From positions 124,001-188,000 of the IMG/VR virus record IMGVR_UViG_3300022752_000015: a stretch of DNA of 64,000 bases, one strand, 5' to 3'. The notes beneath the pieces are model-generated. The model was not told the DNA's origin. It saw only the letters and a list, made by a program, of their open reading frames with translations, and did not search any database. A program made the position numbers and the translations under genes. Shown piece after piece: positions 13,804-37,301 of the stretch (position 1 is the first letter of the stretch; each line of letters starts with the position of its first letter).

Positions 13804-13811
13804 AATTGAAA

Positions 13812-17281: not shown

Positions 17282-17341
17282 CAACGATATATTACCTACT
17301 TTTCAAAAGTTGTAATAAAAATTCATCAAACTAACAAAAAA

Positions 17342-18160: not shown

Positions 18161-18196
18161 TGTTATAAGGTAATTTACATTACCTTATTAGTTCAA
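18161..18196 (-). promoter_or_regulatory. Sigma70-like promoter, leaderless type, overlapped by a perfect 10-bp inverted repeat
   Basis: TTGAAC-N18-TACCTT-N6-ATG(18160); IR ataaggtaat-ttac-attaccttat at 18165-18188. Confidence 0.55.
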
Positions 18197-19125: not shown

Positions 19126-19160
19126 ACAAAGATTATAAGAAAAAATAAAAAAATGATCAA
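19126..19160 (-). promoter_or_regulatory. Sigma70-like promoter, leaderless type
   Basis: TTGATC-N17-TATAAT-N6-ATG(19125). Confidence 0.65.
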
Positions 19161-19162
19161 GA

Positions 19163-20068: not shown

Positions 20069-20769
20069 CTTTTTACTTTTTCTTTTGAGTAAGTTCTCTT
20101 AGCAATTTCAAAAGCATTTTGAAAATCTTCATCTCTATAATCAACATTTTCGTACGATAAAGACAACTTAAATCCCATTAGACACATGCCTCTGATTCTG
20201 TCAAAATCGTTTTTTTCCCAAGCAGAATAGACCTTATTAAGAATGTCTGATTGGTTCTTTTTACCTCTATGAAAGCCGTAATGAAATGCTTGAGATTCTG
20301 AAGAGTACCAGCAATGCTTCCCGGCAGGTATTAACTTTTCAGGTAATTGATTTCCGCGTAAAACGATATCATGACCCGTGTCTGCTCGATCAGGATACAA
20401 CTTATCAACTTTTGTTGCAACATTGACAGTGTTTTTTAAGCAAGTTAGTCCATATATCAAGCTGTCTGTCAAATAATCGTGTAACCAAGCTTGCGCACCT
20501 GTTACTCTAGAGTTACTTTCAAAAACTTCAACAAAGTTTTTTATAACTTCATTATGAGACAAGACAGTATCGGCATCAACCTTCAAGAAAAGTTGATGAT
20601 CTTTTTTAGCTTCATTCCACGCGGAAAATAATTTTTCATGAGCTTCTTTTTCTGGAAGATTAGAAACAACGTAATGTGTCAGTTCTACGCCTACTTGATT
20701 TTTTATTGATTCTTTACAAGTTTGAAAATCTAACTCTCCATGTTCCATGGTTCCAACAAAAATTTTCAT
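20065..20769 (-). CDS. Putative GT-A (GT2-like) glycosyltransferase
   Basis: FLKVDADTVL DxD motif after a hydrophobic strand; cluster context. Confidence 0.55.
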   Translation of the reverse strand: MKIFVGTMEHGELDFQTCKESIKNQVGVELTHYVVSNLPEKEAHEKLFSAWNEAKKDHQLFLKVDADTVLSHNEVIKNFVEVFESNSRVTGAQAWLHDYLTDSLIYGLTCLKNTVNVATKVDKLYPDRADTGHDIVLRGNQLPEKLIPAGKHCWYSSESQAFHYGFHRGKKNQSDILNKVYSAWEKNDFDRIRGMCLMGFKLSLSYENVDYRDEDFQNAFEIAKRTYSKEKVKR

Positions 20770-23211: not shown

Positions 23212-23212
23212 T

Positions 23213-24238
23213 TTAGTTCTTTCTATTAGTTGCAATCTCTTCTATCTTTAACCCTTGAAAATTATCTAAAGACATGTCAATAATTCCAAGCTCATTAAGT
23301 TTGGCAAAAAGTTGTTCTTTAGTCATGACATCGTCGGCACTAGTGTAAGTGAATCTGTTATTAGTTCCAGACTGATATGCAGGTCCTATTACGTAGTGAG
23401 TTTCTACATCTTTTGTCCTGACGGATTCAGATTCGTTAACAAGATCTTCATGTTTTTTCTCGCCTGGTCTCAAACCAATTATTTTAATTGGTTTTTTATA
23501 TAAGCTTGAAAAAATTTCTGCCAAATCTCCTATTTTCATCGCTGGTATTTTAGGGATCCAAGTTTCACCACTCTCTCCTCTTTTTAAAGCTTCTAAAATT
23601 AGATCTACACTGTCATCTAAAGTCATAACAAATCTAGTCATGTTTGGATCTGTTACTGTCAAATTTTCAGAATACTCAGCTTGATACTTAAAAAGAGGAA
23701 TTATACTTCCTCTAGATTCTAGAACATTTCCATACCTAGTGCACAAAAACTTAACGCCAGTTGAGTCATTCTTTGATTGACTAGTTACAAGACGTTCAGA
23801 TATCCCTTTACACATTCCGTAAACATTTACAGGAGAGCAAGCCTTGTCTGTACTGACAAATAAAACTTTTTCAACTTTCCAGTCTGATGCCCAAGATTGA
23901 GAAATATCTTTCACGGATTTAACGACATTTTGAGTTCCTAACAAATTTGTCATTACGCTTTCAAAAGGGCTAAGCTCACAAGTGTCAACTTGTTTTAGAG
24001 CAGCCGCAACAATTATGATTTCAGGTTTGTAATGAAGTATGACTTCTTTTACTCGATTATAATCTCTAATGTCTCCAACAAAAAACTCTACATCCGTAGA
24101 AGAATTAAGTTCATTCTTTATGGTCCAATGTTTGGCTTCATCTCTAGAATAAACTGCGATTTTATCTCCGTTTATCAAAAATCTAGAAATTAATTTTTTT
24201 CCTAATGAACCTGTTCCACCAAATATAAGATATTTCAT
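23213..24238 (-). CDS. UDP-GlcNAc 4,6-dehydratase (PseB/FnlA/CapD-like, Polysacc_synt_2 family)
   Basis: FGGTGSLG, YSRDEAK, GDIRD, AAALKQV, STDKACSPVNVYGMCK, RYGNVLESRGSIIP, GLRPGEK. Confidence 0.9.
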   Translation of the reverse strand: MKYLIFGGTGSLGKKLISRFLINGDKIAVYSRDEAKHWTIKNELNSSTDVEFFVGDIRDYNRVKEVILHYKPEIIIVAAALKQVDTCELSPFESVMTNLLGTQNVVKSVKDISQSWASDWKVEKVLFVSTDKACSPVNVYGMCKGISERLVTSQSKNDSTGVKFLCTRYGNVLESRGSIIPLFKYQAEYSENLTVTDPNMTRFVMTLDDSVDLILEALKRGESGETWIPKIPAMKIGDLAEIFSSLYKKPIKIIGLRPGEKKHEDLVNESESVRTKDVETHYVIGPAYQSGTNNRFTYTSADDVMTKEQLFAKLNELGIIDMSLDNFQGLKIEEIATNRKN

Positions 24239-24275
24239 CGTTCAAATTATAACTTTTGCAAAAAAAACTGTTCAA
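24239..24275 (-). promoter_or_regulatory. Sigma70-like promoter, leaderless type
   Basis: TTGAAC-N18-TATAAT-N7-ATG(24238). Confidence 0.65.
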
Positions 24276-25099
24276 AGTTTAGTAACATCATTTAAAGAAA
24301 TTTCAGATATTGTATCAGATCTAGTAGGTCTATAATCAATTTCTAAATTGTAATTTCTGCTTCCGTTTACAACAACATTGACATTTTCATTTCCTAGCTT
24401 AGAATGAAATACTCCGCCATCTAAAAGTGCTGAAATCTTGTATCTATCGTAGTATAACTTTTGATAATCAGTTTCGCTAAATTTTTTTAAAGAAGAAAGA
24501 TCTAAAAAAACTTCTTTTATAGCTTGAATTCTACTTAAAGCTGGTAGTTTTGCTAAAAAATTGCATTTATAAATTCCTTCATAATTTGTCTTATGAAACT
24601 CTACTCTTTTGTTTTGAATAAAATTATTTTGAGTCACCCATGCATATTTCCTTGAATTTTTTTTTGGACTTCCTTTATCATAAAGATGTCTTTCTGCAAC
24701 AAAAAATTCTTCTGTTCTTACAAACCCTACATCATCATTAGAATCTAAAAATGACTCACACATCTCTAGCTTTTTTAAAGAATCATCAAAATGGATTAAA
24801 TCAGATTCAATTATGTAAAGATATTTGTAATCTCTACTCATTAACGTTTGATAATTTTTCAAACACCAATGTATTGCACTCCAAAGTCCTACGTTTAGTT
24901 TAGATTGATAAACATTATTAAAGTTGTCTGTCAGCAATTTTACGCTACCTGTATAAGAAGAAGCGTTGTCAAATACCAACATGTTATGTAACGTTTTTTT
25001 ATCAAATACATTACACAAATTATTAACAACTTGATTCAAAATTTCAAATCTTGTAATATCTTTCGTACAAGTAACCAAAAGAAATAAAGTATCTTTCAT
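24272..25099 (-). CDS. Putative GT2-like glycosyltransferase
   Basis: LVFDNAS...NVGL...YLYIIESD; start moved to ATG 25099 (ATGA overlap). Confidence 0.55.
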   Translation of the reverse strand: MKDTLFLLVTCTKDITRFEILNQVVNNLCNVFDKKTLHNMLVFDNASSYTGSVKLLTDNFNNVYQSKLNVGLWSAIHWCLKNYQTLMSRDYKYLYIIESDLIHFDDSLKKLEMCESFLDSNDDVGFVRTEEFFVAERHLYDKGSPKKNSRKYAWVTQNNFIQNKRVEFHKTNYEGIYKCNFLAKLPALSRIQAIKEVFLDLSSLKKFSETDYQKLYYDRYKISALLDGGVFHSKLGNENVNVVVNGSRNYNLEIDYRPTRSDTISEISLNDVTKL

Positions 25100-26229
25100 G
25101 TTAGTTCTCCAATAAAATTTTCCCAATTTTCCCAATAAGAATTATTAAGAATCTCTTTTTGAAGTTCTAACATCCCATTTCTTAATTTTTTAACGTAAGA
25201 ATCATCAAATAACAATTTTTCAATCGAGTTTGTTGCTTTAATTGCATCATCAACAAGAATACAATTAATGTTATCTATAAGATATTTTGAAGCATTTGAA
25301 GAATTAACGTATCTATTAGTCGTAATAATAGGAGTTCCAGAATTTAAGCAGTAATAAAAAACTCCTCCGCCCCAATCAGTCTGTTTAAAATGAACAGCCG
25401 CTTTTAATCCAGAAGTAATCTTATAAGATTGCCTAGGCGTGATTGTAGGAAATTTACCAGTTACGCCATTTTCTTTTGAATATCTGATGTCAGCTCCTGC
25501 GCTACGGACGTTTCCGCCAAAGTTTATTACTTCTGGAAGATTGATTTCCTTAAGTAAGGAATTCATTTTTTTGAAAATCTTATAGTCGTCTGGTTGTCTT
25601 ACTTCAAAGTTGTGATTAAACGAAGCAAAAGAAACGTTTTCGTAACCTGAAATAGAGACATTCGTGATATCTAGTAATGACTTTTCGAATGGTAGGCAAA
25701 AGACATTAACGTTGTTTACGTCTACATTTTTATTTTCATAGTTTGCAGGAATAAATTTGGCGGCATTTCTTGTTTTATAATTTCCAGGCGAACTATCCCA
25801 AGCATTCATCGTTGAAGATACCCATTTTGCATTTGGGAAATATTCTGAAGCTATTTTGAAATATTGGTATAAAGAACTCTCGCCGCCTCGTAAAGTGTGG
25901 AATACATCAATTGAACATTTTTGTTTTGTCAAATCTATGATTTGACAAGAGATGTCTTCTTCATAAAGATTATGAGATTTAAAATCTTTCAAAAAGTAAT
26001 CTTCTCCAAAAAAAGAAAAATTTTCTTCAAATGGATAAATTTCTAAATTTCTTTTTGTTTTGTCTTCAAAAGATTTACAAAGCATAGCAGGCCAAGTTGC
26101 TATTCTTTGCCAGTTTAGACCAAGAGTTCCTTTTTTAGGAACAAAAACCTTATGTCCCAATTTTGAATAGTGGTAGATCATAGAAGCTAGTCCACTTCTA
26201 TCATCTGTAGGAAATATTAAGACGTTCAT
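25096..26229 (-). CDS. Putative GT-B glycosyltransferase-like protein
   Basis: C-terminal HFKQTDWGGGVFYYCLNSGTPIIT...YLIDNINCILVD resembles a degenerate GT4 donor-binding region; cluster context. Confidence 0.5.
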   Translation of the reverse strand: MNVLIFPTDDRSGLASMIYHYSKLGHKVFVPKKGTLGLNWQRIATWPAMLCKSFEDKTKRNLEIYPFEENFSFFGEDYFLKDFKSHNLYEEDISCQIIDLTKQKCSIDVFHTLRGGESSLYQYFKIASEYFPNAKWVSSTMNAWDSSPGNYKTRNAAKFIPANYENKNVDVNNVNVFCLPFEKSLLDITNVSISGYENVSFASFNHNFEVRQPDDYKIFKKMNSLLKEINLPEVINFGGNVRSAGADIRYSKENGVTGKFPTITPRQSYKITSGLKAAVHFKQTDWGGGVFYYCLNSGTPIITTNRYVNSSNASKYLIDNINCILVDDAIKATNSIEKLLFDDSYVKKLRNGMLELQKEILNNSYWENWENFIGELT

Positions 26230-27143
26230 CAAAATTCCTCTTCAGGTCCTTCTAAAAGAATTTTATTTTGTGGATATTTTACCTGGTCTTTATTAACCAC
26301 TTTGTATTCCCACCCGTCTGATTTACAGACATCAGTAAACCCTAATGGAATCCTAGAATTTTGCTTTTGTTGATATTGTTCATCAGACAATCTTTCATAG
26401 TACATACCAGAAGCAGATGGAGCATCTAAATAATAACCATATCTCTTATTGCCTCTAATGAAAGCGTATCCTCCTCTAGGATCATTCCATACTGGGGCGA
26501 ACAGTGGAACCCAGCTAGAATAGTTCGTTTGATCTTTTAACTTCAATTTTACTTCATTGTCGTACCAGTCTTCTGATCTTCCCCAATAATCTTGAGTCTG
26601 AGGCCAATCGACTGGGTACTTTCCGATTAAGTCAAAGACTTCTTTTTTGAAAAATCCCATCGTAGGGAAATGATTATCTGTTGGTTTGTAATATTTGTAA
26701 TTTTCAAGCTTAAAAACTTCACATCTATCAGCATCATACCTGTTTGATACAGTCGAGTTTCTAACAGCATTTACTTCTAATGCTTTCGCCTCATCAAAGT
26801 TGACAAAATCTTGAACTGTTTTTTCAAAAACTTCATTATTAACAATCAATTGCAAATCATCTTGTAAGAATAAAATCACATCATTTTTTGCGGTCTCGAT
26901 GATCATGTTCTTAGCGACGTATTCATCATTTACCCAATTTCTTTCTTTGGGATCTCTCAAAAATAAATCGTCTATCAAATTAGATTTTTTAAGATTAAAA
27001 AGATAATCTTGCAAACCTTTTTCAGTGCTACAATTATCAATAACAATAATTTGATTGTTGCTTTTTACATTTTCTAAAGACTTTAAAAGAGACTTAGCAT
27101 ACTTTAGTCTATTAAAAGTTGTAACTGCAATAGTAATTGACAT
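26229..27143 (-). CDS. Glycosyltransferase, GT2 family
   Basis: ITIAVTTFNRL...IIVIDNCSTE...AKN...ILFLQDD...YWGRSED. Confidence 0.8.
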   Translation of the reverse strand: MSITIAVTTFNRLKYAKSLLKSLENVKSNNQIIVIDNCSTEKGLQDYLFNLKKSNLIDDLFLRDPKERNWVNDEYVAKNMIIETAKNDVILFLQDDLQLIVNNEVFEKTVQDFVNFDEAKALEVNAVRNSTVSNRYDADRCEVFKLENYKYYKPTDNHFPTMGFFKKEVFDLIGKYPVDWPQTQDYWGRSEDWYDNEVKLKLKDQTNYSSWVPLFAPVWNDPRGGYAFIRGNKRYGYYLDAPSASGMYYERLSDEQYQQKQNSRIPLGFTDVCKSDGWEYKVVNKDQVKYPQNKILLEGPEEEF

Positions 27144-27164
27144 ATTTGCCTCCTTATCTACTCT

Positions 27165-28067
27165 TCAAATAATGGATATTAAATTTCTATATCCTTGATA
27201 TCCTTGTGGTAATTTCCAGGATTCAACGTTGGGGATTGAAGGAATAGCTAAGCTAACATCGTCTTGAATAGAATGAAGAGGAAGAACTTGAGTAGCTATT
27301 CCTATGTTTCTTGAAACTACTGGAACATTTAATAATCCACATTCTATCAAAGATTGAGGACCTCCTTCACACCTTGCTGTCACAGGATATAAATCAAGAG
27401 TTTGATATAACTCGTTTATTACATCGTGAGGTGGTCGTTCGACATATGTGAATGGTATTCCAGATTTTTTTAGTCTAGAGATTATATACTGTCTTCTCCA
27501 TCCAGCCAAAACAACATGCAAGTCAGGATTCTTTTTAACGACTTTTTCTAGATAATCGGCCAGCAAATCTGGACCTTTTTCTAATTTAGGACTTATCAAA
27601 TCAGATCCTTCTGTGTCTCTTTGAAAAGATCCTATCAAGTATGAATTCAACGGCAAATTATATTTTTTTCTTAAATCGTTTTTACTTCCAGTTGCTTTCC
27701 ATATCTTTTGATTTGCCCAATATGGTACCACGAATACTTCTTTTTTTGTTAATCTACTTATAAAGTCTTTAGTCTGTTCATTGTAAACGTGATACGCTGT
27801 CGTTAACTTATCTCTAAACATAAATTCTTGATAAGCTAAAGAATTAAATTTTTCAGGAACAATGTGGTGAACGGTGGTCAAAACTTTTTTCCCGTTTAAC
27901 CAACCTGATTGATACAGATTTTGCCAAGCCCAATCAGCTAATAACCAAACTACATTTGCGTCTTTTGGGTGATTAACACTTATGTCTGAATTATCTTCAT
28001 TCCATTCTTTGACAAATCTATCGACTATCCAATCCTCAGATGGAGGTAAGACAAACACCTTATTCAT
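27165..28067 (-). CDS. Glycosyltransferase, GT4-like
   Basis: GSFQRD...EKGPDLL...YPVTARCEGGPQSLIECGLLNVPVVS; start moved to ATG 28067 (ATGA overlap). Confidence 0.8.
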   Translation of the reverse strand: MNKVFVLPPSEDWIVDRFVKEWNEDNSDISVNHPKDANVVWLLADWAWQNLYQSGWLNGKKVLTTVHHIVPEKFNSLAYQEFMFRDKLTTAYHVYNEQTKDFISRLTKKEVFVVPYWANQKIWKATGSKNDLRKKYNLPLNSYLIGSFQRDTEGSDLISPKLEKGPDLLADYLEKVVKKNPDLHVVLAGWRRQYIISRLKKSGIPFTYVERPPHDVINELYQTLDLYPVTARCEGGPQSLIECGLLNVPVVSRNIGIATQVLPLHSIQDDVSLAIPSIPNVESWKLPQGYQGYRNLISII

Positions 28068-28963
28068 TGAAAAATTATATTCCAAAAATGTTTCATTGAA
28101 TCGGACCATCTTAAAATATCATAAGAATTATTCTTCAAATCTCTGCTAAGCAACAACTTTTCAATTTCAAAAAAATTCTTATAGACATGATCTATGCCTG
28201 CGAATTCTACAGATCCGCCACCTTCAACATGAACGTATGTTGGCAAACCTACAGCAATAGATTCTAAAACATGATTAGGTCCTGGGTCATGTCTTGATCC
28301 ACTTATATAAACATCATGTTTTGCTAACTCTTTTGCTAACTCTTCTCCGTGAATTGGAGGAATTATTTTTGTATTGTTAAAGGTACCTCTTTCTCTTCCG
28401 ATGTAAGTAAATTCAATATTTCTTTCTTTCGTGGTCAAATAATCAATAAACTCGTATACGTCAAATCCCTTTAAAGAATTGTTAGACCAATGATGAGTTA
28501 CTACTTTGAGTTTATTATCTGAACGAGTATATGAGTTGTTCTTTCTATTTTCAATGAAAGTGTCATCTACTCCGTTGTGCACAACGTATTGTTTCTTACA
28601 ATTCCACCCTTTTTTATTGAAGTAATCTTTCATCCAGTTACTAACAAAAATTGTTTTTGTATTTAAGATGCTACATTGTAAGAGCAAACTATCCATGTGT
28701 TCAGTACCTTTTCTAGCATCACATTCATTGATTCTTTGAACAACTGGAATTTTTTTAACAGAAGACACAAATTTGTAGACGTCATTTGCGTCAAACATTC
28801 CATTTTCTTTTCTAGGATCCATTAGAAATATGGAATCAACATCTTCTGACAGATTATTAGTAATGGTTATGCCAGAAGGAACAGTTGCATATACTGCTCT
28901 AACAAAATTGTTTCCGCCGCCCCAAGGTCCGTCTATTGGCTTTCTATTTATGGCTATTTTCAT
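28064..28963 (-). CDS. Glycosyltransferase, GT4-like
   Basis: GPWGGGNNF...FVSNW...VVHNGVD...KGFD...DPGPNHVLESIAVGLP. Confidence 0.8.
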   Translation of the reverse strand: MKIAINRKPIDGPWGGGNNFVRAVYATVPSGITITNNLSEDVDSIFLMDPRKENGMFDANDVYKFVSSVKKIPVVQRINECDARKGTEHMDSLLLQCSILNTKTIFVSNWMKDYFNKKGWNCKKQYVVHNGVDDTFIENRKNNSYTRSDNKLKVVTHHWSNNSLKGFDVYEFIDYLTTKERNIEFTYIGRERGTFNNTKIIPPIHGEELAKELAKHDVYISGSRHDPGPNHVLESIAVGLPTYVHVEGGGSVEFAGIDHVYKNFFEIEKLLLSRDLKNNSYDILRWSDSMKHFWNIIFQ

Positions 28964-29889
28964 AATAGTTCTTTAAAAAATGTTAGATAATCATTCATGA
29001 CTCTATTCATTGAGACGTCTGTGTCAGGCTTTTTGTCTTTTAGGTCTGGAAGTTTTTCTTTTATTTGGCTCACGTCTATTTTTGGAGGATTATCATAGTT
29101 GACTAGTTCGTAATCATATGGTTGATTCTCTTTTAAAATCACTCCAAAATTCTTAACTAGTTCTTTTGTGCCTCCTTGCTCCGAACAAATAACAGGAGTA
29201 AATTGAGATAAAGATTCTACCACCGTATTAGGACAATGATCTAACCAAGCAAGGTGAATCATCCAATTTGAAGCAGAGAATACTTCTAGACAAACTTCAT
29301 GAGGTTGAGGTCCTGTGTAGAATATGTCTACATCAGGAATCATTTTTGGATTTGAACCCATCACTATGAGCGCGGCTGAACTATAAAAACTTTGTAAATG
29401 CTTGAATAACTCAACGTTAGATTCAAGCCTTTTTTGTGAGTGCCAATTTGCTGAACAGACAAAAAGCATTTCATACTTTTGTCTAATTTGTTCTAATGAA
29501 GAAATTTTAAACTGTTTAACGGGTTCAGCATTTATGCCATTCAATATGATCTTTCCATTTTTTGGAATTCCCCACCATTTCGACGCCATATTCTTATCAA
29601 ATTCAGATTGCCAGATCACGCCATCAGCTTTTTGATATAATGATTTTATATTGAAGTTTTTTACGTGAAATTCAGATGGAGAAAACCAAATTCCATCAAG
29701 TCTTTGAACGACTTTCTTTGCCAAGGGTCTACCGCTAGGTTCAATAAAAACCAAAGAAACATCTGAATTTCTTCCATCATAAATTTCTACCTCATGCCCA
29801 GATTCTATAAGACCTTTTGCAAATCTCTTTGCAAAAGAATTTGGACCTGAATTAGATCCCATATTCACATTGTCTAAATGTATTTTCAC
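28960..29889 (-). CDS. Glycosyltransferase, GT4-like
   Basis: SGPNSF...VQRLDG...WQSEF...ILNGI...KRL...DHCPNTVVESLSQFTPVICSEQGGTKELV. Confidence 0.8.
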   Translation of the reverse strand: MKIHLDNVNMGSNSGPNSFAKRFAKGLIESGHEVEIYDGRNSDVSLVFIEPSGRPLAKKVVQRLDGIWFSPSEFHVKNFNIKSLYQKADGVIWQSEFDKNMASKWWGIPKNGKIILNGINAEPVKQFKISSLEQIRQKYEMLFVCSANWHSQKRLESNVELFKHLQSFYSSAALIVMGSNPKMIPDVDIFYTGPQPHEVCLEVFSASNWMIHLAWLDHCPNTVVESLSQFTPVICSEQGGTKELVKNFGVILKENQPYDYELVNYDNPPKIDVSQIKEKLPDLKDKKPDTDVSMNRVMNDYLTFFKELL

Positions 29890-30248
29890 GATCTTCGTTT
29901 TACCTCTGAAATAAAAGGTGTGGCAAATTCAGTACCATTTAGCATAACGGCCATTAAAGCAATTTCTTTAGTTTCAATATTTTTTAAACTAGCTCTTTGC
30001 GTAAAGATGTTGGGATCTAATTCTTGGGTCTCGTTTATGTTTATAGAATCATAGTACATTTGAGCTAGAAAATTAACTGATTCATTTGATAGAGGGGTTG
30101 CAGCCGTTTTTATCACTTCAGACAATGTAAAAAATACATCGTTATAAATCTCTATGCAAGTTGCTTTATTTAAAATTTGATTCTTTCTTTTTGAAAGTCT
30201 TTCCACTAACAGCTTAGTAATAGAATCATGAAAATTTTGCTTTTTCAT
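29886..30248 (-). CDS. Hypothetical protein within the glycosylation island
   Basis: 120 aa, ATGA-coupled to GT genes on both sides; no motif recognised. Confidence 0.55.
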   Translation of the reverse strand: MKKQNFHDSITKLLVERLSKRKNQILNKATCIEIYNDVFFTLSEVIKTAATPLSNESVNFLAQMYYDSININETQELDPNIFTQRASLKNIETKEIALMAVMLNGTEFATPFISEVKRRS

Positions 30249-30979
30249 TTTACAAACCCACGTTTTCTTAAAAATACAGCTTCATCTCTTTGAAATTTAG
30301 CGTCATCTGTTTGATACGTCTCAGGAACATCTTTAATGGTATAATGATACATTATACGAGGCAAAAATAGCCTTTTTTTAGACTTATGAAGAACTGGTAA
30401 GTAAATCGCTTGATCTCCTGCTCTTCTTATATAGTTGCCGTCCTCTCCTCTAAAGTTTTCATCTTTTACTTCATTTATTAAAATTTTTCTAAACGTTTTT
30501 AGATGACTTGAAACCCAAGGATAAGCGTAAACATCTGCGTCGTTAGGCATAGTGTTGCTAATATTTTTATCAGAAAAACTCCATCGATGAGCTGTCCAAA
30601 GAGCTTCGCAACCTGTTTCAACATACGCATGGTTAATGATAGATAACGCATCAAGATCTGTCAACCAATCATCTGCATCTATTCTACAAACAATATCATT
30701 GTCATCGCACTTAGATATTCCTGTTAATACATTAGCTACTTCCCATTTTTTTTCAACATTCCATACAAAATCAATTTTTTTCTTGTAAGCTTGATCTAAC
30801 ATGTTAGAAAAATCATTTTCTATTTTTTTACATTTTCTAACATGTTCGTCTGAAGATACGTCATCGATCAAAATTACTCGCCAATTTTCATATGATTGAC
30901 CACAAATAGAATGAAGCATCCGAGGCAAGGTCTCGGATGCGTTATACATTGGAGCAACAAAAACGAATCTATTTTGCAT
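30245..30979 (-). CDS. Glycosyltransferase, GT2 family
   Basis: FVAPMYNAS...SICGQSYENW...LIDDVSSD...RIDADDWL...AGDQAIY. Confidence 0.85.
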   Translation of the reverse strand: MQNRFVFVAPMYNASETLPRMLHSICGQSYENWRVILIDDVSSDEHVRKCKKIENDFSNMLDQAYKKKIDFVWNVEKKWEVANVLTGISKCDDNDIVCRIDADDWLTDLDALSIINHAYVETGCEALWTAHRWSFSDKNISNTMPNDADVYAYPWVSSHLKTFRKILINEVKDENFRGEDGNYIRRAGDQAIYLPVLHKSKKRLFLPRIMYHYTIKDVPETYQTDDAKFQRDEAVFLRKRGFVK

Positions 30980-30983
30980 TAGA

Positions 30984-32906
30984 TTATAACATAATTTTGG
31001 GCTGAGATTTGTTCACAACAATATGATAAGTTTTTGTCTTACCATCCCATTTTTTATGCCAAATCCAACCGCCTAAACTTTCCGAAAGTTCAGTAGCTTT
31101 AGAAGCTATCATTTCATCTGTTACTTGCGACCAAGGGACATCAAACATCATATTTGATTCTGCTGTGTCTTCATAAGATTTTCCTGACAAAGATTCCCAA
31201 TGTTTGGTCCAATATTTTTTGTAAAGCTTAATCTTTCTATTCAAATCAAACCAACTATAATGAAACACACCAGGTAAATTATCAACGACTTTATTGAACC
31301 ACTCTTGATAATTTTTTATTGCGTCAGGATCTCCTAAAACAGCTTTATTACGAACATCATCAACTTCAGAAGTGTAAAAAGTTACGTGAGGTATTCTTTC
31401 GTAAGATGATGAATCTATCATGTCACATCCATCTCCATAAGCCGCATAAAGATTTCCATTTTCATCAGTTCGACGAGCATCTAAAGGTATTCCGTGAGTG
31501 ATATTTTTCTTATTTTTACTTAATCTCCACTTCCAAGGAAGAACATCGGCTCTAACTTTCTCAGGGCCTCCCCAATATTCAACAACTGGCAATGATATAA
31601 TATCTACGCTAGTTGGGAACTTAGCACATAAATTTAATATTTTTTCACAATCTTCTTCATGCACTATTTCGTCTGAATCCATTTGCCAACAAAAATCTCC
31701 TGTGCACATGGATCTTGCTTCGGCTTTTTGCATTCCGTCAAAAACAGCAAATCTAGGATGACTCCAATCTCTTATCACTTGTTTCAGTTTGATCTTTGTT
31801 TCAGTAGATGACAATTCTTGAAGCTTCTCCCAAGTGCCGTCTGTAGAACCTCCATCAACAATACAAACCTCCTCACAAAAAGGAAGCATAGACTTAACAC
31901 ACTGTATAAATGGATATTCTTGAGACAATGCATTATAAACCGTCACATATCCGCTGATATTAGGACGATATTCCATCATCTTTTTTATGTAATTCCAAAA
32001 TAGAGTTGGCGCTCCAAATAAGTACTCTTCAATCTCTTCAACGTTATTTGTAGAGAACCAATCTTCATTTTTATGTTGTACGTTTTCATTCAAATGAAGT
32101 TTGCATCCCAGAAGCTTCGCTTCTATGACCATTCTTGGGCAGGTATCAGCGCCTGCTGGAAGATATACAAAACCTTCTGCATTAGCTAACTTTTCCAACA
32201 TGACTTCGTAAGCTACATTCCAGACAACTTCATATTCTACTTTGTTGTCTAAGCACCACTTTTCTGCAGCTTGAGCTCCTTTTACCCATGATTCTGATCC
32301 TAAGACTATCCACCTTTTTCGATCTGATGTTGATAAAGAAACAGCTTCTCTGAGCCACTTGATGGTACCTAGAGTTTTTTTCGAAAATACGCTTGATAAG
32401 ACAACATTATCTTTTTCAGATAAAAATGGGAACATTCTATGATAACGATCTTTTTGCGCCTCTGACATCCACCATAGAACTTTTGCTCCATAATAAAAAG
32501 CAGAAATTAATTTTCCATTGAATTGGTTGTGACAATCACATGGAGATCCGGTTTTCTCAGAATGTTTTTCAGGAGATCTGTACTTGCAATATTTGTAATC
32601 ATATTCTAAAATAGAATAATTCAAATTTCCAATTATGCTTGGAACTAGTTCCATGTTCATTTGAGCAAAATTGCCAAAGATCCAAAACTTATTGGTTCCT
32701 TGAGCTAACAAATGCATAGTCAGCTCTTTTGAACGAATTTTCATGTAAGGCAAAGGACATTCATCAATCAAAGCCTGCGTGGTTAGTTCTGCTCCGCCGA
32801 CATAATCTTCTGAAAAAAGATCAGCTACAAAAATAACCTTAACTTCATCAGGGATGATGAGAGGTCTAGAACTATTTTCGAATACGCTTTTATTGAATGT
32901 TTGCAA
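30984..32906 (-). CDS. Two-domain glycosyltransferase (GT-B + GT2 fusion)
   Basis: N-part GGAELT...KGA...DTCPRMVIEAKLLGCKL (GT-B); C-part ISGYVTVYNA...CIVDGGSTDGT...WQMDSDEIV (GT2); TTG start with GAGG upstream. Confidence 0.8.
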   Translation of the reverse strand: MQTFNKSVFENSSRPLIIPDEVKVIFVADLFSEDYVGGAELTTQALIDECPLPYMKIRSKELTMHLLAQGTNKFWIFGNFAQMNMELVPSIIGNLNYSILEYDYKYCKYRSPEKHSEKTGSPCDCHNQFNGKLISAFYYGAKVLWWMSEAQKDRYHRMFPFLSEKDNVVLSSVFSKKTLGTIKWLREAVSLSTSDRKRWIVLGSESWVKGAQAAEKWCLDNKVEYEVVWNVAYEVMLEKLANAEGFVYLPAGADTCPRMVIEAKLLGCKLHLNENVQHKNEDWFSTNNVEEIEEYLFGAPTLFWNYIKKMMEYRPNISGYVTVYNALSQEYPFIQCVKSMLPFCEEVCIVDGGSTDGTWEKLQELSSTETKIKLKQVIRDWSHPRFAVFDGMQKAEARSMCTGDFCWQMDSDEIVHEEDCEKILNLCAKFPTSVDIISLPVVEYWGGPEKVRADVLPWKWRLSKNKKNITHGIPLDARRTDENGNLYAAYGDGCDMIDSSSYERIPHVTFYTSEVDDVRNKAVLGDPDAIKNYQEWFNKVVDNLPGVFHYSWFDLNRKIKLYKKYWTKHWESLSGKSYEDTAESNMMFDVPWSQVTDEMIASKATELSESLGGWIWHKKWDGKTKTYHIVVNKSQPKIML

Positions 32907-33030: not shown

Positions 33031-33045
33031 TTTAGGAGGATGTAT

Positions 33046-33648
33046 ATGTCGAGAAAAAAATCTAACACTCAAGTAAGTTCTCCAAATTTTCCTGATAAAC
33101 ATCTTGACATCAAAGATTCTCCTGACAGCATTGAAACAAAAAAGACGTTGGATGCTATTGAAAGCAATAGACAGCAGATTTTAGAGATGCAAAAAAGAAT
33201 CTTATCGGCTCCTGCTATGAATGGTGGCTTCTCTAATTTAATGTACAAAATTGAAAAAATAGAGCAATCGCAAACGCAGTTGGTTGTGAAAGTCGATGAG
33301 ATAAGAGAAGTCTTATATGATCCTGATAATGGTTTATACGCAAGAATAAAAAACGTTGAAAATAGTTCAGCTGAAATTGAAAGAGTTGAAGAGTTGGAAG
33401 AACAACTACATTCCATACAAAGCTGGAAAATTCATGAAGAAAAATTAGCTCAAAAAGAAGAGCTCAATGATGAAAATCTTGCAAAGATTATAAATCAACA
33501 TTCTGAGGTAATTAAAGAATTACAGTCTTGGTACCAAAAACAAGCAGCTTTTACTAGATGGCTTTCAATTGCAGTAGGTACAGCAATCTTAGGTGCTATT
33601 GGTAAGATAATACATGCTTACATCAATTCTCATGTTCAAATTATTTGA
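33046..33648 (+). CDS. Coiled-coil protein with C-terminal transmembrane helix (XhlA/holin-like architecture)
   Basis: Heptad-rich body, then WLSIAVGTAILGAIGKII; AGGAGG at 33034-33039 favours the ATG at 33046. Confidence 0.55.
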   Translation: MSRKKSNTQVSSPNFPDKHLDIKDSPDSIETKKTLDAIESNRQQILEMQKRILSAPAMNGGFSNLMYKIEKIEQSQTQLVVKVDEIREVLYDPDNGLYARIKNVENSSAEIERVEELEEQLHSIQSWKIHEEKLAQKEELNDENLAKIINQHSEVIKELQSWYQKQAAFTRWLSIAVGTAILGAIGKIIHAYINSHVQII

Positions 33649-33680: not shown

Positions 33681-34874
33681 GTGGCAATTTTTCTAAAAAA
33701 AGAAATACTTGAATCATTTAAAGAAGTCTGTAATGATTTAAGAAATTTTTCAAATACAGAAAAAGTATTATTCCTTGAAAAAGATCAAGTTTTGATTAAA
33801 ACTTCATTTCAAGGAATTTTTAATTTAAAATATTCTAATCAGCTAAAATTAGCTATTCATAGGTTGATAGTAGAACACTGCATTTTATCAGAAAAAATAT
33901 CTCCTGGAGGGTTTGACTTAACATTACATAAAATTGTAAGTTCTGATTTAAACAATCTAGATAAAGCTTCAAATAAAGCTACTTTGAATGATTTAAAAAA
34001 TATAATTGTTTCTCAAACTAAAGACGATGACTTTCTGAACAAAATGTTATTTGATGCCGTGCTTTTAGCTGGATTTGGCGGTAGAATATCTGTAGAAAAA
34101 TCCAGTAATAATTTTGCTTCGATTGAAGTGATTGATGGTTTCACATTTAAAGTAAAAACTTTTGAAGAAAAACCTATCAAAATAGCAAATCCTAAAATCA
34201 TTGTTATTGATGGATTTGTTGAATCTGTTTCTGAAATTAATTTATTGCTTGAAGGTGCAAGTGTAACAAAGCATCCTGTAGTCTTAATAACTAGAGGACT
34301 TCATGAAGAAGTACTAAATACGATAAAAGTTAATAAAATTAGAGGAGTTATTGAAGTTTATCCTATCGTAGTAGAGTTTAATCTAGAAGGTATAAATAAG
34401 CTTAACGACATCTCAATAGCTTGTTCTACATCTTTGTTTTCTAGCAATTTAGGCCAGCTAATTTCTAACATTTCTATAGATGATGCAAAAAAAATAGATG
34501 AAATTTCTATTTATGTTAATTCAATTTGCATAAAGAATCAAGCATCAAAATCTGATGTTAATTCTCATATAAAATTCTTATTGTCTAAAAGAGAAGAATC
34601 AAAAAATGTAGAAGAAATTTACGAAGATAGAATAAGATCTTTATCTTCCAATAATGTACTCATTAGACTTCCAGATACTAACGATTTTGTTGTAAAAAGA
34701 CAATCAATTGACTATTGTCTTAGGTCGATAAAATCTATGATAGAATTTGGAGTATTAAATGATTCTAAACCTTATGGATCTTATGTCTCTTCTAATTTAT
34801 ATTCTAAATTGTTTTTTGAAAAATTAAGTTCATTAGGTGCAGTAATACATAACTCTGCCATTATGTCATACTAG
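33681..34874 (+). CDS. Degenerate GroEL/Cpn60-like chaperonin
   Basis: AGFGGRISVEKS...IEVIDGF...IANPKIIVIDGFVESVSEINLLLE...HPVVLITRG...LNTIKVNKIRG...EDRIRSLS...KRQSIDYCLRSIKSMIEFGV aligns by eye with the GroEL intermediate and apical regions; no GDGTTT motif; start moved to GTG 33681. Confidence 0.7.
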   Translation: MAIFLKKEILESFKEVCNDLRNFSNTEKVLFLEKDQVLIKTSFQGIFNLKYSNQLKLAIHRLIVEHCILSEKISPGGFDLTLHKIVSSDLNNLDKASNKATLNDLKNIIVSQTKDDDFLNKMLFDAVLLAGFGGRISVEKSSNNFASIEVIDGFTFKVKTFEEKPIKIANPKIIVIDGFVESVSEINLLLEGASVTKHPVVLITRGLHEEVLNTIKVNKIRGVIEVYPIVVEFNLEGINKLNDISIACSTSLFSSNLGQLISNISIDDAKKIDEISIYVNSICIKNQASKSDVNSHIKFLLSKREESKNVEEIYEDRIRSLSSNNVLIRLPDTNDFVVKRQSIDYCLRSIKSMIEFGVLNDSKPYGSYVSSNLYSKLFFEKLSSLGAVIHNSAIMSY

Positions 34875-35676
34875 CAAGTATTGCAGCTAGATCATCTTTA
34901 TCAGAAAGTTCAAACCCAAATTTTTCTTTGAATTTTTCATTAAACTTTCTTATATCTTGTTCGTTTGCTCCCTTAAAGATATCTTTAATCTTTACATCAG
35001 GTGTGGCAGGTGTTGGTGGACCACCAGGGGGTGTTGGTGGAGCTGGCGGTTCACTTTCTTGTACTTTTCCTGCAAAAGCGTTTAATGACTTAACTGGCAT
35101 GTTTACAAACTCATCAACTAGACGAGTTATATCAAAAGGAATTTCTAGCTTTTCAGGATTAAGAACTTTAATTTCAGAATTAAAAGAAGAAGTTAAAGCA
35201 GATTTGAACTTTTTATATTCATTAGGAAAAAGTTCTGTCATCTTTTTGCTAACTCTGTTACCGGTTTTACTGTCTTCTAATTCTTTTTTTAGAATATCTT
35301 CATAATCTCTTATAGATGCTCCTGCCTCTGAAATATCTTTTATTACATTATGAAATCCCACAAAAATTCTTTGTAGTTTTTTTATGCCTTCTATTGCTGC
35401 CGCTTCATCCTTAGGTTTTAAAGAACCTGATTGAATTTTTTCTAGATACTCAAATTGTTTGTCTCGAGCTTTTTCTAAAAAACCTTTGATGGCAGTAGAA
35501 CTTATACCTTCGCTGGTTAAAGCATCCAGATATATTTTTGATTGTTTATTAACAGCTCCAGCGAATTTTATAAATTGTTTTTTTTCTTTTTCAGATATCT
35601 CTTTTAGAACCTTAGATTCTAATAAAGCGATTTTTAACGCTACGATATCTTCATTAACTTTGTTTACTTCACTCAT
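34861..35676 (-). CDS. Hypothetical Lys/Glu-rich protein with Pro-rich linker (possible internal virion protein)
   Basis: 271 aa, counter-oriented; EPPAPPTPPGGPPTPATP linker; preceded by the late-type motif ATAATTTATT. Confidence 0.55.
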   Translation of the reverse strand: MSEVNKVNEDIVALKIALLESKVLKEISEKEKKQFIKFAGAVNKQSKIYLDALTSEGISSTAIKGFLEKARDKQFEYLEKIQSGSLKPKDEAAAIEGIKKLQRIFVGFHNVIKDISEAGASIRDYEDILKKELEDSKTGNRVSKKMTELFPNEYKKFKSALTSSFNSEIKVLNPEKLEIPFDITRLVDEFVNMPVKSLNAFAGKVQESEPPAPPTPPGGPPTPATPDVKIKDIFKGANEQDIRKFNEKFKEKFGFELSDKDDLAAILASMT

Positions 35677-35946: not shown

Positions 35947-36462
35947 ATGAAGAAAAGAAAAGCCCAAATCCAGGATTCTGGAACAAGCTTAAAAGAATCT
36001 TTTGGACAAAAGCATCTAATAAAATGTAGATGCATTTTGCCGCAAATGAAAAACACTGCAAATCCTGCTCCTCATTGTTTTGTGGTTTTTTCTGAAGTAT
36101 TTGAAGGTCAAATAAAACCTAAATTTTCTCAATGTAATAACTGCGGAGTGGTTCACAAGGTTGTTGACATATGCTCTTCGGAAATAATGAGTGGAAAAGA
36201 TGCAATGAGTTCTATTATGACTATAGACGACATTAGATCTTCCATGAACAAAAGCTTATCTTCGATATTAGATAGACACAATTGTGATTTACCTACTTGG
36301 GAGTTTGCTCAATACGTTGTTGAGAATAAAAGATGGGGAGAAATTGTCGTATTATCTACTGACGTAGAAAAAGAAGATAAAATTATAAAATACGTTAGAA
36401 TTTTAGGCGATTCATTGTTCAAAGTAGATTCTCACATAAGAAAAGAAACATTAGGTGAGTAA
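35947..36462 (+). CDS. Hypothetical Zn-finger protein
   Basis: HLIKCRC...HC...QCNNCGVVH...DIC Cys/His clusters. Confidence 0.55.
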   Translation: MKKRKAQIQDSGTSLKESFGQKHLIKCRCILPQMKNTANPAPHCFVVFSEVFEGQIKPKFSQCNNCGVVHKVVDICSSEIMSGKDAMSSIMTIDDIRSSMNKSLSSILDRHNCDLPTWEFAQYVVENKRWGEIVVLSTDVEKEDKIIKYVRILGDSLFKVDSHIRKETLGE

Positions 36463-36703
36463 TATGCAAACTTTTGGTAAGCTTTCTTCTGAAAAATTAG
36501 CAGAGGAAAATGAAGAATGTCGAAAGATCGTAAAAGAAATTTTGAATGTAGGTCTTACGCAAAGGCAACAAATGTTCCTTATTTATTTACTTTCTCTTGA
36601 ATTAGAGAATATAGAATATGTAAAAGACCTGACAGAAGTGATTAAAGAAATTGCAGGAGACGATATTTTTGTCTCAAGGAGCGATGATGGGAAGATCAAT
36701 TAA
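36455..36703 (+). CDS. Hypothetical protein
   Basis: 82-aa ORF overlapping both neighbours. Confidence 0.5.
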   Translation: MSNMQTFGKLSSEKLAEENEECRKIVKEILNVGLTQRQQMFLIYLLSLELENIEYVKDLTEVIKEIAGDDIFVSRSDDGKIN

Positions 36704-37301
36704 CGTAAAAACTCCGTTTACAACAAAAAATAAAACCGGCGATCATGATGAAGCTGAATTAGCAGCTTTGCTCCCTCATCCAAAACATGGAGAAGATTCT
36801 AGAATCGTAGTATTATACGGAGGGGTCAGCGAACAATCAATTTCCGCAGTAATCTATCAGCTCTTGTATTTAGCAAATCAAAACCACAAACCAATTCATC
36901 TAGTGGTTTCTACTTACGGAGGATCTGTAGATGAAATGTTTTCGCTTTATGATACCATCAGATTTTTGCCATGTCCTGTCCATACCATAGCGTTGGGCAA
37001 AGTAATGTCAGCAGGCGTGCTACTATTAGCTTCTGGTGTGAAAGGTAAACGTTTAATCGGGTCATCAGCAAGACTTATGATGCATCCTATATCAGGTGGT
37101 TTTTACGGTAACGTTTTTGAATCTATGAGTGAAACTAACGAATTCAAAAGGTTGCAAGAATTGATGGTTTCATCTCTTCAAAAAGAATCCAACATGACAA
37201 AGGAGCAAGTCGAAAAAATCATGAAATCTGGACATGATTTTTATGTGACTCCTGAAGAAGCAATCAAATTAGGCATCGTGGATAAAATTATTGGTGCATA
37301 A
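36687..37301 (+). CDS. clpP: ClpP-family serine protease (peptidase S14)
   Basis: VSTYGGSV...LYDTIR...GKVMSAG (Ser)...KGKR...MMHP (His)...HDFY (Asp)...EEAIKLGIVDKI; AAGGAG at 36676-36681 supports a start at 36684/36687. Confidence 0.9.
   Translation: MGRSINVKTPFTTKNKTGDHDEAELAALLPHPKHGEDSRIVVLYGGVSEQSISAVIYQLLYLANQNHKPIHLVVSTYGGSVDEMFSLYDTIRFLPCPVHTIALGKVMSAGVLLLASGVKGKRLIGSSARLMMHPISGGFYGNVFESMSETNEFKRLQELMVSSLQKESNMTKEQVEKIMKSGHDFYVTPEEAIKLGIVDKIIGA

What the first reader, a model, noticed from the sequence alone, without database searches (positions are those of the whole stretch)
33681..34874. ATPase-dead-looking, truncated GroEL homolog
Seen: ~397 aa that follow the GroEL intermediate and apical domains, but the position expected for the GDGTTT nucleotide-binding motif reads SEKISPGGFD and most of the C-terminal equatorial region is missing. 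No GroES is nearby. Known: jumbo-phage chaperonins (EL gp146, OBP gp246) are full length and keep the ATP site. Inference: this may be an ATP-independent holdase/mini-chaperone, a hetero-oligomer subunit, or a modulator of host GroEL. The long intact frame and its own promoter argue against simple decay.
Basis: partly seen in the sequence, partly recalled or inferred. Interest (0 to 1): 0.6.

Follow-up and report, generated by a model that had tools for sequence, protein, structure and literature searches.

The report
Phage mini-GroEL without an ATP pocket
A freshwater jumbo phage carries a conserved, selected, 397-residue relative of the GroEL folding machine in which the ATP pocket and the ring-to-ring contacts have been cut out, and close relatives of the phage also carry a normal full-length GroEL, so this looks like a natural ATP-free spin-off of a chaperonin.

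Summary
The gene is real (window 33681-34874, +, GTG start, 397 aa). It belongs to a viral-only family of about 70 protein clusters and 50 IMG/VR loci. Members are 370-450 aa and under purifying selection (dN/dS 0.07-0.13). Sequence similarity to GroEL covers only the intermediate and apical domains (GroEL ~140-411). A confident AlphaFold2 model (pLDDT 88.8) nevertheless superposes on GroEL end to end (Z 24.5, 394 residues). About 130 residues have been lost from inside the equatorial domain. GroEL ~414-492 is replaced by about five residues. The TLGPKG loop is gone. There is no GDGTTT motif. D52 is Thr and D398 is variable. The N- and C-terminal strands, the stem-loop hairpin and the last helix are kept. 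The ATP pocket therefore cannot be intact. The apical groove is partly polar (L234 to N/H, V263 to K/R).

The more complete relatives also encode a canonical full-length GroEL with all ATP motifs, and no GroES. The window's contig breaks off before that region. A matching contig exists in the likely source sample.

Best reading: a nucleotide-independent, probably single-ring GroEL derivative that works beside the phage's own GroEL. The function is inferred, not shown. It is a new variant of a known kind.

The parts
33681..34874 (+). CDS of the short GroEL-like protein (397 aa, GTG start; the frame is open from TTG 33645, but homologues begin at the 33681 position)
   Evidence: dN/dS 0.13 against L001
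33681..33983 (+). Reduced N-terminal equatorial part: N-terminal strand, helix A, stem-loop hairpin, helix B and two helices. The TLGPKG loop is absent and the 'KD' of GroEL 51-52 reads 'KT'.
   Evidence: AF2 secondary structure; end-to-end superposition on GroEL; column frequencies
33891..33914 (+). Family motif E-x-x-S-P-G-G-F (invariant Glu, P0001 residues 83-90). It is the only Gly-rich conserved motif of the N-terminal part and may occupy the former P-loop position.
   Evidence: register unresolved
33984..34133 (+). Intermediate domain, first segment (helices F and G and the hinge motif AGFGGxIxxEKS, which matches GroEL VGKEGVITVE). The TISAN nucleotide contact is not conserved.
34134..34649 (+). 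Apical domain, the best conserved part. Helices H and I are recognisable (N265 and R268 equivalents invariant), but L234 is N/H, V263 is K/R and the Y199-F204 loop is deleted.
   Evidence: hhalign; frequencies; apical-domain structures Z 22-24, rmsd ~2 A; region dN/dS 0.04-0.16
34650..34751 (+). Intermediate domain, second segment (equivalent of helix M). D356, R360 and G369 are invariant. The position of the catalytic D398 is variable (Y/Q/F/H/K).
34752..34871 (+). C-terminal equatorial remnant: a loop of about five residues replaces GroEL ~414-492, followed by the last helix and the C-terminal strand. There is no Gly-Met tail.
33040..33648 (+). Upstream neighbour: 202-aa coiled-coil protein with a C-terminal hydrophobic segment, probably co-transcribed. 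It sits directly upstream in at least 35 of 50 loci. Context only; no functional link is shown.
35947..36462 (+). Downstream neighbour: 171-aa Cys-rich protein found with the short GroEL gene in 49 of 50 loci. Context only.

Best explanation
The gene encodes a functional member of a viral-only family of 'mini-GroELs'. These are old, strongly diverged paralogues of group I chaperonin. Their apical and intermediate domains and the ring-forming elements of the equatorial domain are kept: the N- and C-terminal strands, the stem-loop hairpin and the last helix. The sub-domain that holds the nucleotide and makes the ring-to-ring contacts has been excised (shown). It therefore cannot bind and hydrolyse ATP the way GroEL does (shown at the level of sequence and model). 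The phage lineage also carries a canonical full-length GroEL elsewhere in the genome, so the short protein is an added component and not the phage's only chaperonin (shown for relatives; inferred for this phage from collinearity and a contig in the likely source sample). Inferred mechanism: it assembles into a single ring, or a smaller oligomer, through the retained strand and hairpin contacts. It acts without nucleotide as a specialised binding or holding platform for a restricted set of phage proteins, with its partly polar apical groove selecting the client or partner. It probably sits in a fixed 'open' conformation like GroES-bound GroEL, in which conserved residues of helix M (D356, R360) and the E-x-x-SPGGF loop take the place of the nucleotide.
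For: Family and selection:
- About 70 protein clusters of 388-426 aa and 50 IMG/VR loci with members of 370-450 aa.
- dN/dS is 0.07-0.13 on unsaturated pairs and below 0.41 in each domain.
- Near-identical DNA occurs in freshwater metagenomes from 12 studies, one of which may be the source of this DNA.

Fold:
- AF2 model has pLDDT 88.8.
- All Foldseek top hits are GroEL, E 1e-27.
- VIA aligns model 12-406 to GroEL 3-528, Z 24.5, rmsd 3.8 A over 394 residues. The best fits are to GroES-bound cis conformers (rmsd 3.6-3.8 A) against 9-10 A for apo rings.

ATP site:
- No GDGTTT or TLGPKG motif in the family.
- D398 is variable and the K51/D52 equivalent reads 'KT'.
- Only 25-57 residues follow the G410 equivalent, against 138 in GroEL.
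- In phage EL chaperonin the nucleotide is held by the P-loop, the alphaA-beta2 loop, helices N and O and the beta17-beta18 hairpin, and that pocket is the only highly conserved part compared with GroEL (PMC7185714).

Second chaperonin:
- Full-length GroEL of 532-546 aa occurs in four relatives, including a 100%-complete one. The three aligned are 43-46% identical to E. coli GroEL with all ATP motifs intact.
- G000 is collinear with G001 and lacks G001 ~5-68 kb, which holds that gene.
- The likely source sample has a 13.8-kb contig that covers the region at about 89-97% identity.

Apical groove changes.
Against: No oligomer evidence: the homodimer prediction gave no answer (score 0.00). No biochemical or expression data exist, and no RNA run holds the gene. 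The equatorial remnants are unrecognisable by sequence, so their assignment rests on one predicted model. AF2's choice of conformer may reflect its training rather than biology. Strong conservation of the hinges and of helix M would also fit a protein that still undergoes a driven conformational cycle. Conserved synteny reflects common descent of these phages and says little about partners.
Confidence: 0.55

Rival explanations
1. It is a partner of the phage's own full-length GroEL. Either it is a non-catalytic subunit that co-assembles into mixed rings through the retained strand and hairpin contacts, or it forms a ring that docks on the GroEL and substitutes for the missing GroES.
For: A full-length GroEL co-occurs in the same genomes. 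No Cpn10 was found in any of six records. The ring-forming elements are retained in the model. Hinge residues (G192 and G410 equivalents) and helix M are conserved.
Against: The two genes are 87-145 kb apart. The short protein shares only 19% identity with the co-resident GroEL, and no similarity in the interface elements. The full-length gene has its own conserved small upstream ORF, which could be its co-factor. Host GroES may serve. No complex test of this pair was run.
Confidence: 0.2
2. It has a non-chaperone ring or scaffold role in virion assembly or another phage process, and reuses the GroEL fold only as an oligomerisation and binding platform.
For: Key hydrophobic groove residues are lost (L234 to N/H, V263 to K/R, the 199-204 loop deleted). 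The gene lies in a conserved block with a ClpP-type protease that matches head-maturation protease families.
Against: The block also holds a helicase, PhoH and glycosyltransferases, so it is not a structural module. The apical helices H and I are the best conserved part, as in true chaperonins.
Confidence: 0.1
3. It modulates or acts as a decoy for the host chaperonin system, by sequestering host GroES or poisoning host GroEL rings.
For: It has a GroEL-like apical domain with conserved N265 and R268 equivalents. The phage encodes no GroES.
Against: The residues that hold the GroES mobile loop are partly polar or deleted. A phage that brings its own GroEL needs a working co-chaperonin supply. 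The host is unknown.
Confidence: 0.07
4. It still uses a nucleotide or phosphate ligand through a remodelled site, with SPGGF as a modified P-loop working with K52/T53, Q56, D356 and R360. It would then be a minimal, non-canonical NTP-driven chaperonin.
For: These residues are invariant or nearly so. The motif resembles D83-x-x-G86-x-G88-x4-T93-V94 of GroEL. Conserved hinges suggest domain movement.
Against: The Mg-binding Asp87 position would be Pro, and D52 is Thr. All base and ribose contacts (GroEL 414-416, 479-481, 493-495) and the alphaA-beta2 loop are deleted. The register of the motif is unproven.
Confidence: 0.07
5. It is a decaying remnant of a GroEL gene, that is, a pseudogene.
For: It is shorter than GroEL and has no Pfam hit.
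Against: The frame is intact in 48 loci at 30-88% identity and with a uniform architecture. dN/dS is 0.07-0.13. The predicted fold is confident.
Confidence: 0.01

Closest known systems
Bacterial GroEL (E. coli GroL, group I chaperonin)
   Same: Same three-domain fold from the N-terminal to the C-terminal strand (Z 22-24.5). Apical and intermediate domains are recognisable by sequence. Hinge glycines and the N265 and R268 equivalents are conserved.
   Different: 397 against 548 aa. GroEL ~414-492 (helices N-Q, the GGG motif, the hairpin and the inter-ring contacts) is excised. The TLGPKG loop is gone, there is no GDGTTT, D398 is not conserved and there is no Gly-Met tail. The apical groove is partly polar. 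It fails the Pfam and NCBIfam thresholds.
Full-length GroEL of the same phage lineage (L058:1408-3030, L057:1483-3114, L059:1483-3123)
   Same: Encoded by the same genomes and of group I type. It shares the apical and intermediate domains with the short protein at 19% identity.
   Different: 532-546 aa. The three aligned copies are 43-46% identical to E. coli GroEL, with all ATP motifs and hydrophobic groove residues intact. The gene is unlinked, 87-145 kb away.
Jumbo-phage chaperonins (EL gp146, OBP gp246, AR9 gp228)
   Same: Phage-encoded GroEL relatives without an encoded GroES. They form single rings or cycle between single and double rings (PMC7185714, PMC9598537). EL gp146 structures match the model at Z 21-22.
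   Different: They are full length, and their nucleotide pocket is the best conserved part (PMC7185714). Here that pocket is removed.
GroEL apical-domain 'minichaperones' (engineered fragments ~191-345/376, e.g. PDB 1kid, 1fy9, 3vz6)
   Same: They are chaperonin pieces without an ATPase. The apical domain of the model superposes on them at Z ~22, rmsd 2.0-2.5 A. Their ATP-independent activity is from my own knowledge of the literature.
   Different: They are laboratory constructs of one domain with the native hydrophobic groove. This is a natural protein that keeps the intermediate domain and a ring-forming equatorial core, and its groove is altered.
Degenerate GroEL paralogues of bacteria (Chlamydia GroEL2/GroEL3, mycobacterial Cpn60.1)
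   Same: They are extra chaperonin copies beside a canonical one, with weakened ATP-site or oligomerisation features. The short protein gives weak NCBIfam hits to NF038369 and NF038370. Cpn60.1 shows impaired oligomerisation (PMC13673040 abstract).
   Different: Those paralogues are full length. The scores here are 31-44 bits against cut-offs of 600, so this is not a member.

Membership tests
Group I chaperonin GroEL/Cpn60 (Pfam PF00118, TIGR02348) | Scores above the curated family thresholds | tested here: not met
   No Pfam family at E<=1. NCBIfam GroEL models score 45-66 bits against cut-offs of 352-1041. PF00118 finds nothing in the whole record.
Group I chaperonin GroEL/Cpn60 (Pfam PF00118, TIGR02348) | Equatorial-intermediate-apical three-domain fold | tested here: met
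   AF2 pLDDT 88.8. VIA Z 24.5, 394 residues, model 12-406 against GroEL 3-528. The equatorial domain is reduced by about 130 residues.
Group I chaperonin GroEL/Cpn60 (Pfam PF00118, TIGR02348) | Nucleotide pocket: TLGPKG loop, K51/D52, GDGTTT, D398, G414-G416, N479-A481, I493-D495 | tested here: not met
   The motifs are absent from the family consensus. D398 is Y/Q/F/H and D52 is T. Only 25-57 residues follow the G410 equivalent.
Group I chaperonin GroEL/Cpn60 (Pfam PF00118, TIGR02348) | Hydrophobic apical groove (Y199, Y203, F204, L234, L237, L259, V263, V264) that binds substrate and GroES | tested here: inconclusive
   L237, L259 and V264 stay hydrophobic. L234 is N/H, V263 is K/R and the 199-204 loop is deleted.
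Group I chaperonin GroEL/Cpn60 (Pfam PF00118, TIGR02348) | Heptameric rings, stacked back to back through equatorial contacts (K105, A109, E434, R452, E461-V464) | tested here: inconclusive
   The intra-ring strands and hairpin are present in the model. The segment that holds E434-V464 is deleted. The homodimer prediction gave no answer.
Group I chaperonin GroEL/Cpn60 (Pfam PF00118, TIGR02348) | Works with a Cpn10 co-chaperonin, usually encoded next to it | tested here: not met
   No PF00166 match in G000 or in five relatives. Use of host GroES is not testable here.
Jumbo-phage chaperonins of the EL gp146 type | Full-length subunit with a conserved nucleotide pocket and ATP-driven cycle | tested here: not met
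   See the pocket row above. PMC7185714 states that the pocket is the only highly conserved part compared with GroEL.
Chlamydia-type variant GroEL2/GroEL3 (NF038370, NF038369) | Scores above the model cut-off (600 bits) | tested here: not met
   31.5 and 44.4 bits.
Short viral GroEL-like family defined here (alignment A1) | 370-450 aa; E-x-x-SPGGF motif; AGFGG hinge; DG[YF][IV]ESVSE and NTIKVN..RG apical motifs; invariant D356, R360 and G369; short C-terminal tail | tested here: met
   P0001 is the query of A1 and carries all invariant columns.

The most novel reading that the evidence does not exclude
The mini-GroEL is a nucleotide-free ring locked in the 'GroES-bound-like' open state. In this reading it works as a built-in partner of the phage's canonical GroEL: a passive second chamber, lid or client-delivery ring in a phage that encodes no GroES. 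That would make a two-component chaperonin system of a kind not described before.
Probability: 0.15. Interest if true: 0.85.

Novelty: new variant of a known kind. Interest (0 to 1): 0.62.

Why it matters
ATP binding and hydrolysis in the equatorial domain are regarded as the core of every chaperonin, and even the most divergent phage chaperonins keep that pocket. This family has removed the pocket and the ring-to-ring interface but has kept the apical and intermediate domains under strong selection, and it is widespread in freshwater. It offers a natural test of what a GroEL body can do without its motor. It also asks why a phage that already has a canonical GroEL keeps a second, motorless one. 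It may further give a compact scaffold for ATP-independent chaperone engineering.

Tried and rejected
- Homodimer prediction with complex prediction: no answer, score 0.00. It is not evidence either way.
- Profile-profile comparison of the N- and C-terminal segments with GroEL (hhalign local and global): not significant.
- GroEL HMM against each family member: the SPGGF motif falls outside any alignment in 68 of 70.
- Folding the fragment P0001 58-146 alone and aligning it to the PDB, to fix the register of SPGGF: only Z 2.9 to one chaperonin, and the reported ranges fit both registers.
- HMMER extensions into this region give inconsistent offsets, so I discarded them as evidence.
- P0069 (476 aa) as a bridging sequence: it is even further from GroEL.
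- Promoter scan: fewer hits than in shuffled sequence, so the 'own promoter' claim is rejected.
- The 94-110 aa ORF upstream of the relatives' full-length groEL compared with GroES: no similarity.
- Literature searches for a ~400-aa phage GroEL-like protein: none found. Marine et al. 2017 analysed only sequences that span GroEL residues 8-514.
- The large representative search (search of protein representatives) was not run. The word search, family scans, IMG/VR scan and Atlas look-up had already placed the protein, and the operators flagged the search as costly.
Full report
**1. What is at the coordinates**

The + strand holds an open frame from TTG 33645 to the stop at 34872-34874 (409 codons). 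I kept this translation as P0001. Forty-eight homologues begin with M-[SA]-[VI]-[FY]-L at the position of GTG 33681. The closest loci have a 397-codon ORF with no earlier start. Residue numbers below are P0001 numbers, which are the true numbers plus 12.

The window is part of an IMG/VR virus record of 212,804 bp, G000, estimated 59% complete. Near-identical DNA is held by lake and freshwater metagenomes from 12 studies, one of which may be the source of this DNA. No phage in the GenBank collection is close. The short protein finds only full-length phage GroELs at 24% identity or less. The neighbouring helicase finds huge and jumbo phages at about 30% identity.

**2. Is it GroEL-like**

Yes, but by sequence only in the middle of the protein.
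- Pfam gives no hit at E<=1.
- PHROG 5725 'chaperonin groEL' matches residues 90-371 (E 1e-20).
- NCBIfam GroEL models give 45-66 bits against cut-offs of 352-1041.
- PDB GroEL chains match residues 102/124-371 to GroEL 129/150-411 (E 1e-13 to 1e-8). A profile of the family reaches E 3e-26.
- hhalign against a GroEL alignment (E. coli plus four phage GroELs) aligns 127-373 to GroEL 154-417 with 99.3% probability.
- The first ~110 and last ~40 residues have no detectable similarity to GroEL.

**3. It is a family, not an accident**

The word-based protein search returned about 70 clusters, nearly all of 388-426 aa, at 88% down to 30% identity, on contigs of up to 282 kb. An IMG/VR scan returned 50 loci. 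In 48 of them the gene is 370-450 aa. Every one has only 25-57 residues after the invariant Gly that matches GroEL G410, where GroEL has 138. No intermediate-length form was seen.

Nei-Gojobori dN/dS on unsaturated pairs is 0.07-0.13. For the window against L001, dS is 0.46 and dN is 0.059. Each domain taken alone stays below 0.41, and the apical and second intermediate segments are the most constrained.

ESM Atlas neighbours are viral 'hypothetical protein' clusters without Pfam families. Some JGI records auto-name members 'chaperonin GroEL'. I found no paper on such a protein. The virioplankton chaperonin survey kept only sequences that span GroEL residues 8-514 (PMC5649160).

**4. Anatomy**

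AlphaFold2 with the 49-sequence alignment gives pLDDT 88.8 and pTM 0.72. All top Foldseek matches are GroEL (E 1e-27). VIA-align puts model residues 11/12-405/406 on GroEL 2/3-525/528. The best match is Z 24.5, rmsd 3.8 A over 394 residues, with T. thermophilus Cpn60 in its Cpn10-bound ring. A similar match is Z 24.4, rmsd 3.6 A, with GroEL-GroES-ADP-BeF. Apo or T-state rings fit at 9-10 A.

The protein therefore runs through the whole GroEL fold, and the missing ~130 residues are internal to the equatorial domain. The predicted secondary structure shows the following.
- Kept: the N-terminal strand (11-16), helix A (18-36), the stem-loop hairpin (40-45 and 48-53), helix B (54-59), two further helices (66-85 and 89-99), helices F and G, the apical domain, helix M (348-368), one last helix (377-396) and the C-terminal strand (400-405).
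- Lost: the eight-residue loop between helix A and the hairpin, which is the TLGPKG loop. It is three residues here.
- Lost: one helix-equivalent between helix B and helix F.
- Lost: everything between the strand after G410 and the last helix (GroEL ~414-492). That covers the GGG motif, helices N-Q and the beta hairpin.
- Lost: the Gly-Met tail.

From established structural work on GroEL, the lost C-terminal sub-domain carries the base and ribose contacts of the nucleotide (G415, N479-A481, I493, D495) and most ring-to-ring contacts (E434, R452, E461-V464). The retained terminal strands and the stem loop form the inter-subunit sheet within a ring. The phage EL chaperonin paper lists the same pocket elements: the P-loop, the alphaA-beta2 loop, helices N and O and the beta17-beta18 hairpin. 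It states that the nucleotide pocket is the only highly conserved part of that protein compared with GroEL (PMC7185714).

**5. ATP-site residues**

No GDGTTT- or TLGPKG-like motif occurs in the family.
- The K51/D52 equivalent reads K-T (K in 30 of 49, T in 36 of 49).
- The TISAN contact of helix F is not conserved.
- The position matching catalytic D398 is Y/Q/F/H/K.
- Its neighbour (matching E397) is an invariant Asp, and the H401 equivalent is an invariant Arg.

The only Gly-rich conserved motif is E83-x-x-S86-P87-G88-G89-F90-x-x-T93-[LI]94. I could not settle this.
- In favour: the helix boundaries of the model (66-85, loop 86-88, helix from 89) coincide with GroEL helix C, the P-loop and helix D. 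The pattern also mirrors D83-x-x-G86-x-G88-x4-T93-V94.
- Alternative: one profile alignment puts the motif on the AAGMNP turn between helices D and E at about 50% posterior. Other HMMER extensions use different offsets. 68 of 70 members do not align there at all.
- A fold of residues 58-146 alone gave only Z 2.9, and its ranges fit both registers.

Either way, the Mg- and phosphate-binding Asp87 is absent. The pocket cannot be intact.

**6. Apical domain**

This is the best conserved region, with 37% mean pairwise identity against 17-20% for the equatorial remnants. Helices H and I are recognisable and the N265 and R268 equivalents are invariant or nearly so. Of the hydrophobic residues that hold substrate and the GroES mobile loop:
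- L237, L259 and V264 stay hydrophobic;
- L234 is Asn or His;
- V263 is Lys or Arg;
- the Y199-F204 loop is deleted.

This argues against a broad GroEL-like substrate range and against standard GroES binding. It fits a narrower client or partner.

**7. Context**

The gene order is conserved across loci that share only 30-45% identity in the short protein: a GT2 glycosyltransferase on the opposite strand, a ~200-aa coiled-coil protein with a hydrophobic C-terminus, the short GroEL, a 171-aa Cys-rich protein (49 of 50 loci), an 82-aa protein, a ClpP-type protease, a helicase and PhoH. Because all these phages are related, this shows common descent rather than functional coupling.

The short gene follows the coiled-coil gene after 32 nt. 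A promoter scan found fewer sites than in shuffled sequence, so an own promoter is not supported. No Cpn10 was found in G000 or in five relatives.

**8. A second, canonical GroEL**

PF00118 finds nothing in G000. It finds a full-length gene in four of nine large relatives searched.
- G001: 278 kb, and its short protein is 88% identical to ours.
- G002.
- G004: 298 kb, with terminal repeats, estimated 100% complete.
- G007.

The three aligned proteins (540-546 aa; the fourth, in G007, has a 532-aa ORF) are 43-46% identical to E. coli GroEL. They keep TLGPKG, KDG, GDGTTT, D398, GGG, D495 and the hydrophobic groove, and they lack the Gly-Met tail. They share only 19% identity with the short protein, so the duplication or acquisition is old.

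G000 is collinear with G001 at about 86% nucleotide identity. Its 3' end maps to G001 ~67.9 kb. Its 5' end maps across the joined ends of G001 to about 5 kb. G000 therefore lacks G001 ~5-68 kb, which contains the full-length groEL at 37.4-38.9 kb. Nothing from that region is in G000.

I laid contigs of four runs on the G001 groEL region. The likely source sample (X1) has a 13.8-kb contig that covers it with 30 differences over 909 bases and 380 over 3,493 bases. The same variant occurs in a run of another study that also holds the window's DNA (X2). The window's phage very probably has the full-length gene on an unassembled part. This is an inference.

**9. Interpretation**

Shown:
- The gene is real, conserved and under selection.
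- It has a GroEL fold with the nucleotide sub-domain and the inter-ring surface excised.
- The ring-forming elements, the hinges (G192 and G410 equivalents) and helix M are kept.
- The apical groove is altered.
- The lineage also has a canonical GroEL.

Inferred: the protein forms single rings or smaller oligomers and acts without nucleotide as a specialised binding platform beside the phage GroEL. The model's resemblance to the GroES-bound conformer, together with the cluster of invariant residues around the former pocket (E83, SPGG, K52/T53, Q56, D356, R360), suggests a subunit held permanently in the closed-intermediate, open-apical state. This rests on a predicted model and on an unproven register.

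Rivals are a subunit or lid of the phage GroEL, a non-chaperone ring scaffold, a modulator of the host system, and a cryptic ligand site. Decay is excluded. The one complex prediction I ran (homodimer) returned no answer, and I list it only as tried.

**10. Verdict**

The specific function remains open. This is a new variant of a known kind: a natural, widespread, motorless GroEL derivative that co-exists with a canonical GroEL in an uncultivated freshwater jumbo-phage lineage.

Noticed in passing
L058:1036-1368; L059:3136-3459 (-); L057:3152-3436 (-); L073:1056-1385: A conserved small ORF (94-110 aa, shared motifs CTEF..H[VI]SQ and AW..G.PV..[VI]T) sits directly upstream of the full-length groEL in all four relatives, in the place where groES usually lies. 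It has no Pfam or PHROG hit and does not align with GroES. It may be a novel co-chaperonin.
   Followed up: partly
window 33040-33648 (+): A 202-aa coiled-coil protein with a hydrophobic C-terminal segment lies 32 nt upstream of the short GroEL gene. It is found in that position in at least 35 of 50 related loci and matches no family.
   Followed up: partly
window 35947-36462 (+): A 171-aa Cys-rich protein (CxC ... CxxC, zinc-ribbon-like) lies downstream of the short GroEL in 49 of 50 loci. It matches no family in Pfam, PHROGs or NCBIfam.
   Followed up: partly
window 34861-35676 (-): A 271-aa ORF with a Pro-rich linker (PPAPPTPPGGPPTPATP) overlaps the 3' end of the short GroEL gene by 14 nt. 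It is present only in the two closest relatives (L001, L002), so it is a recent insertion into the conserved block.
   Followed up: no
window ~13800-32900 (-): A long run of minus-strand genes includes several glycosyltransferases (GT2 and others) and an acetyltransferase. The GT2 genes next to the short GroEL are conserved in 32-41 of 50 loci. This suggests a large glycan-modification module in these phages.
   Followed up: no
window 36651-37301 (+): A ClpP-family protease (PF00574, E 4.5e-38) also matches head-maturation protease PHROGs. It is preceded by a conserved 82-aa ORF that overlaps its start.
   Followed up: no
G001 (record of L002), ends; G000:C1:4467-5827: The two ends of the 278-kb relative G001 are contiguous when laid on G000. 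G001 is therefore a circularly permuted and probably complete genome, although it is scored 84% complete.
   Followed up: partly
window 58754-61891 (+): A single 1045-aa ORF matches both SbcD-like (residues 1-349) and SbcC-like (277-1043) nuclease subunits, which suggests a fused SbcCD.
   Followed up: no
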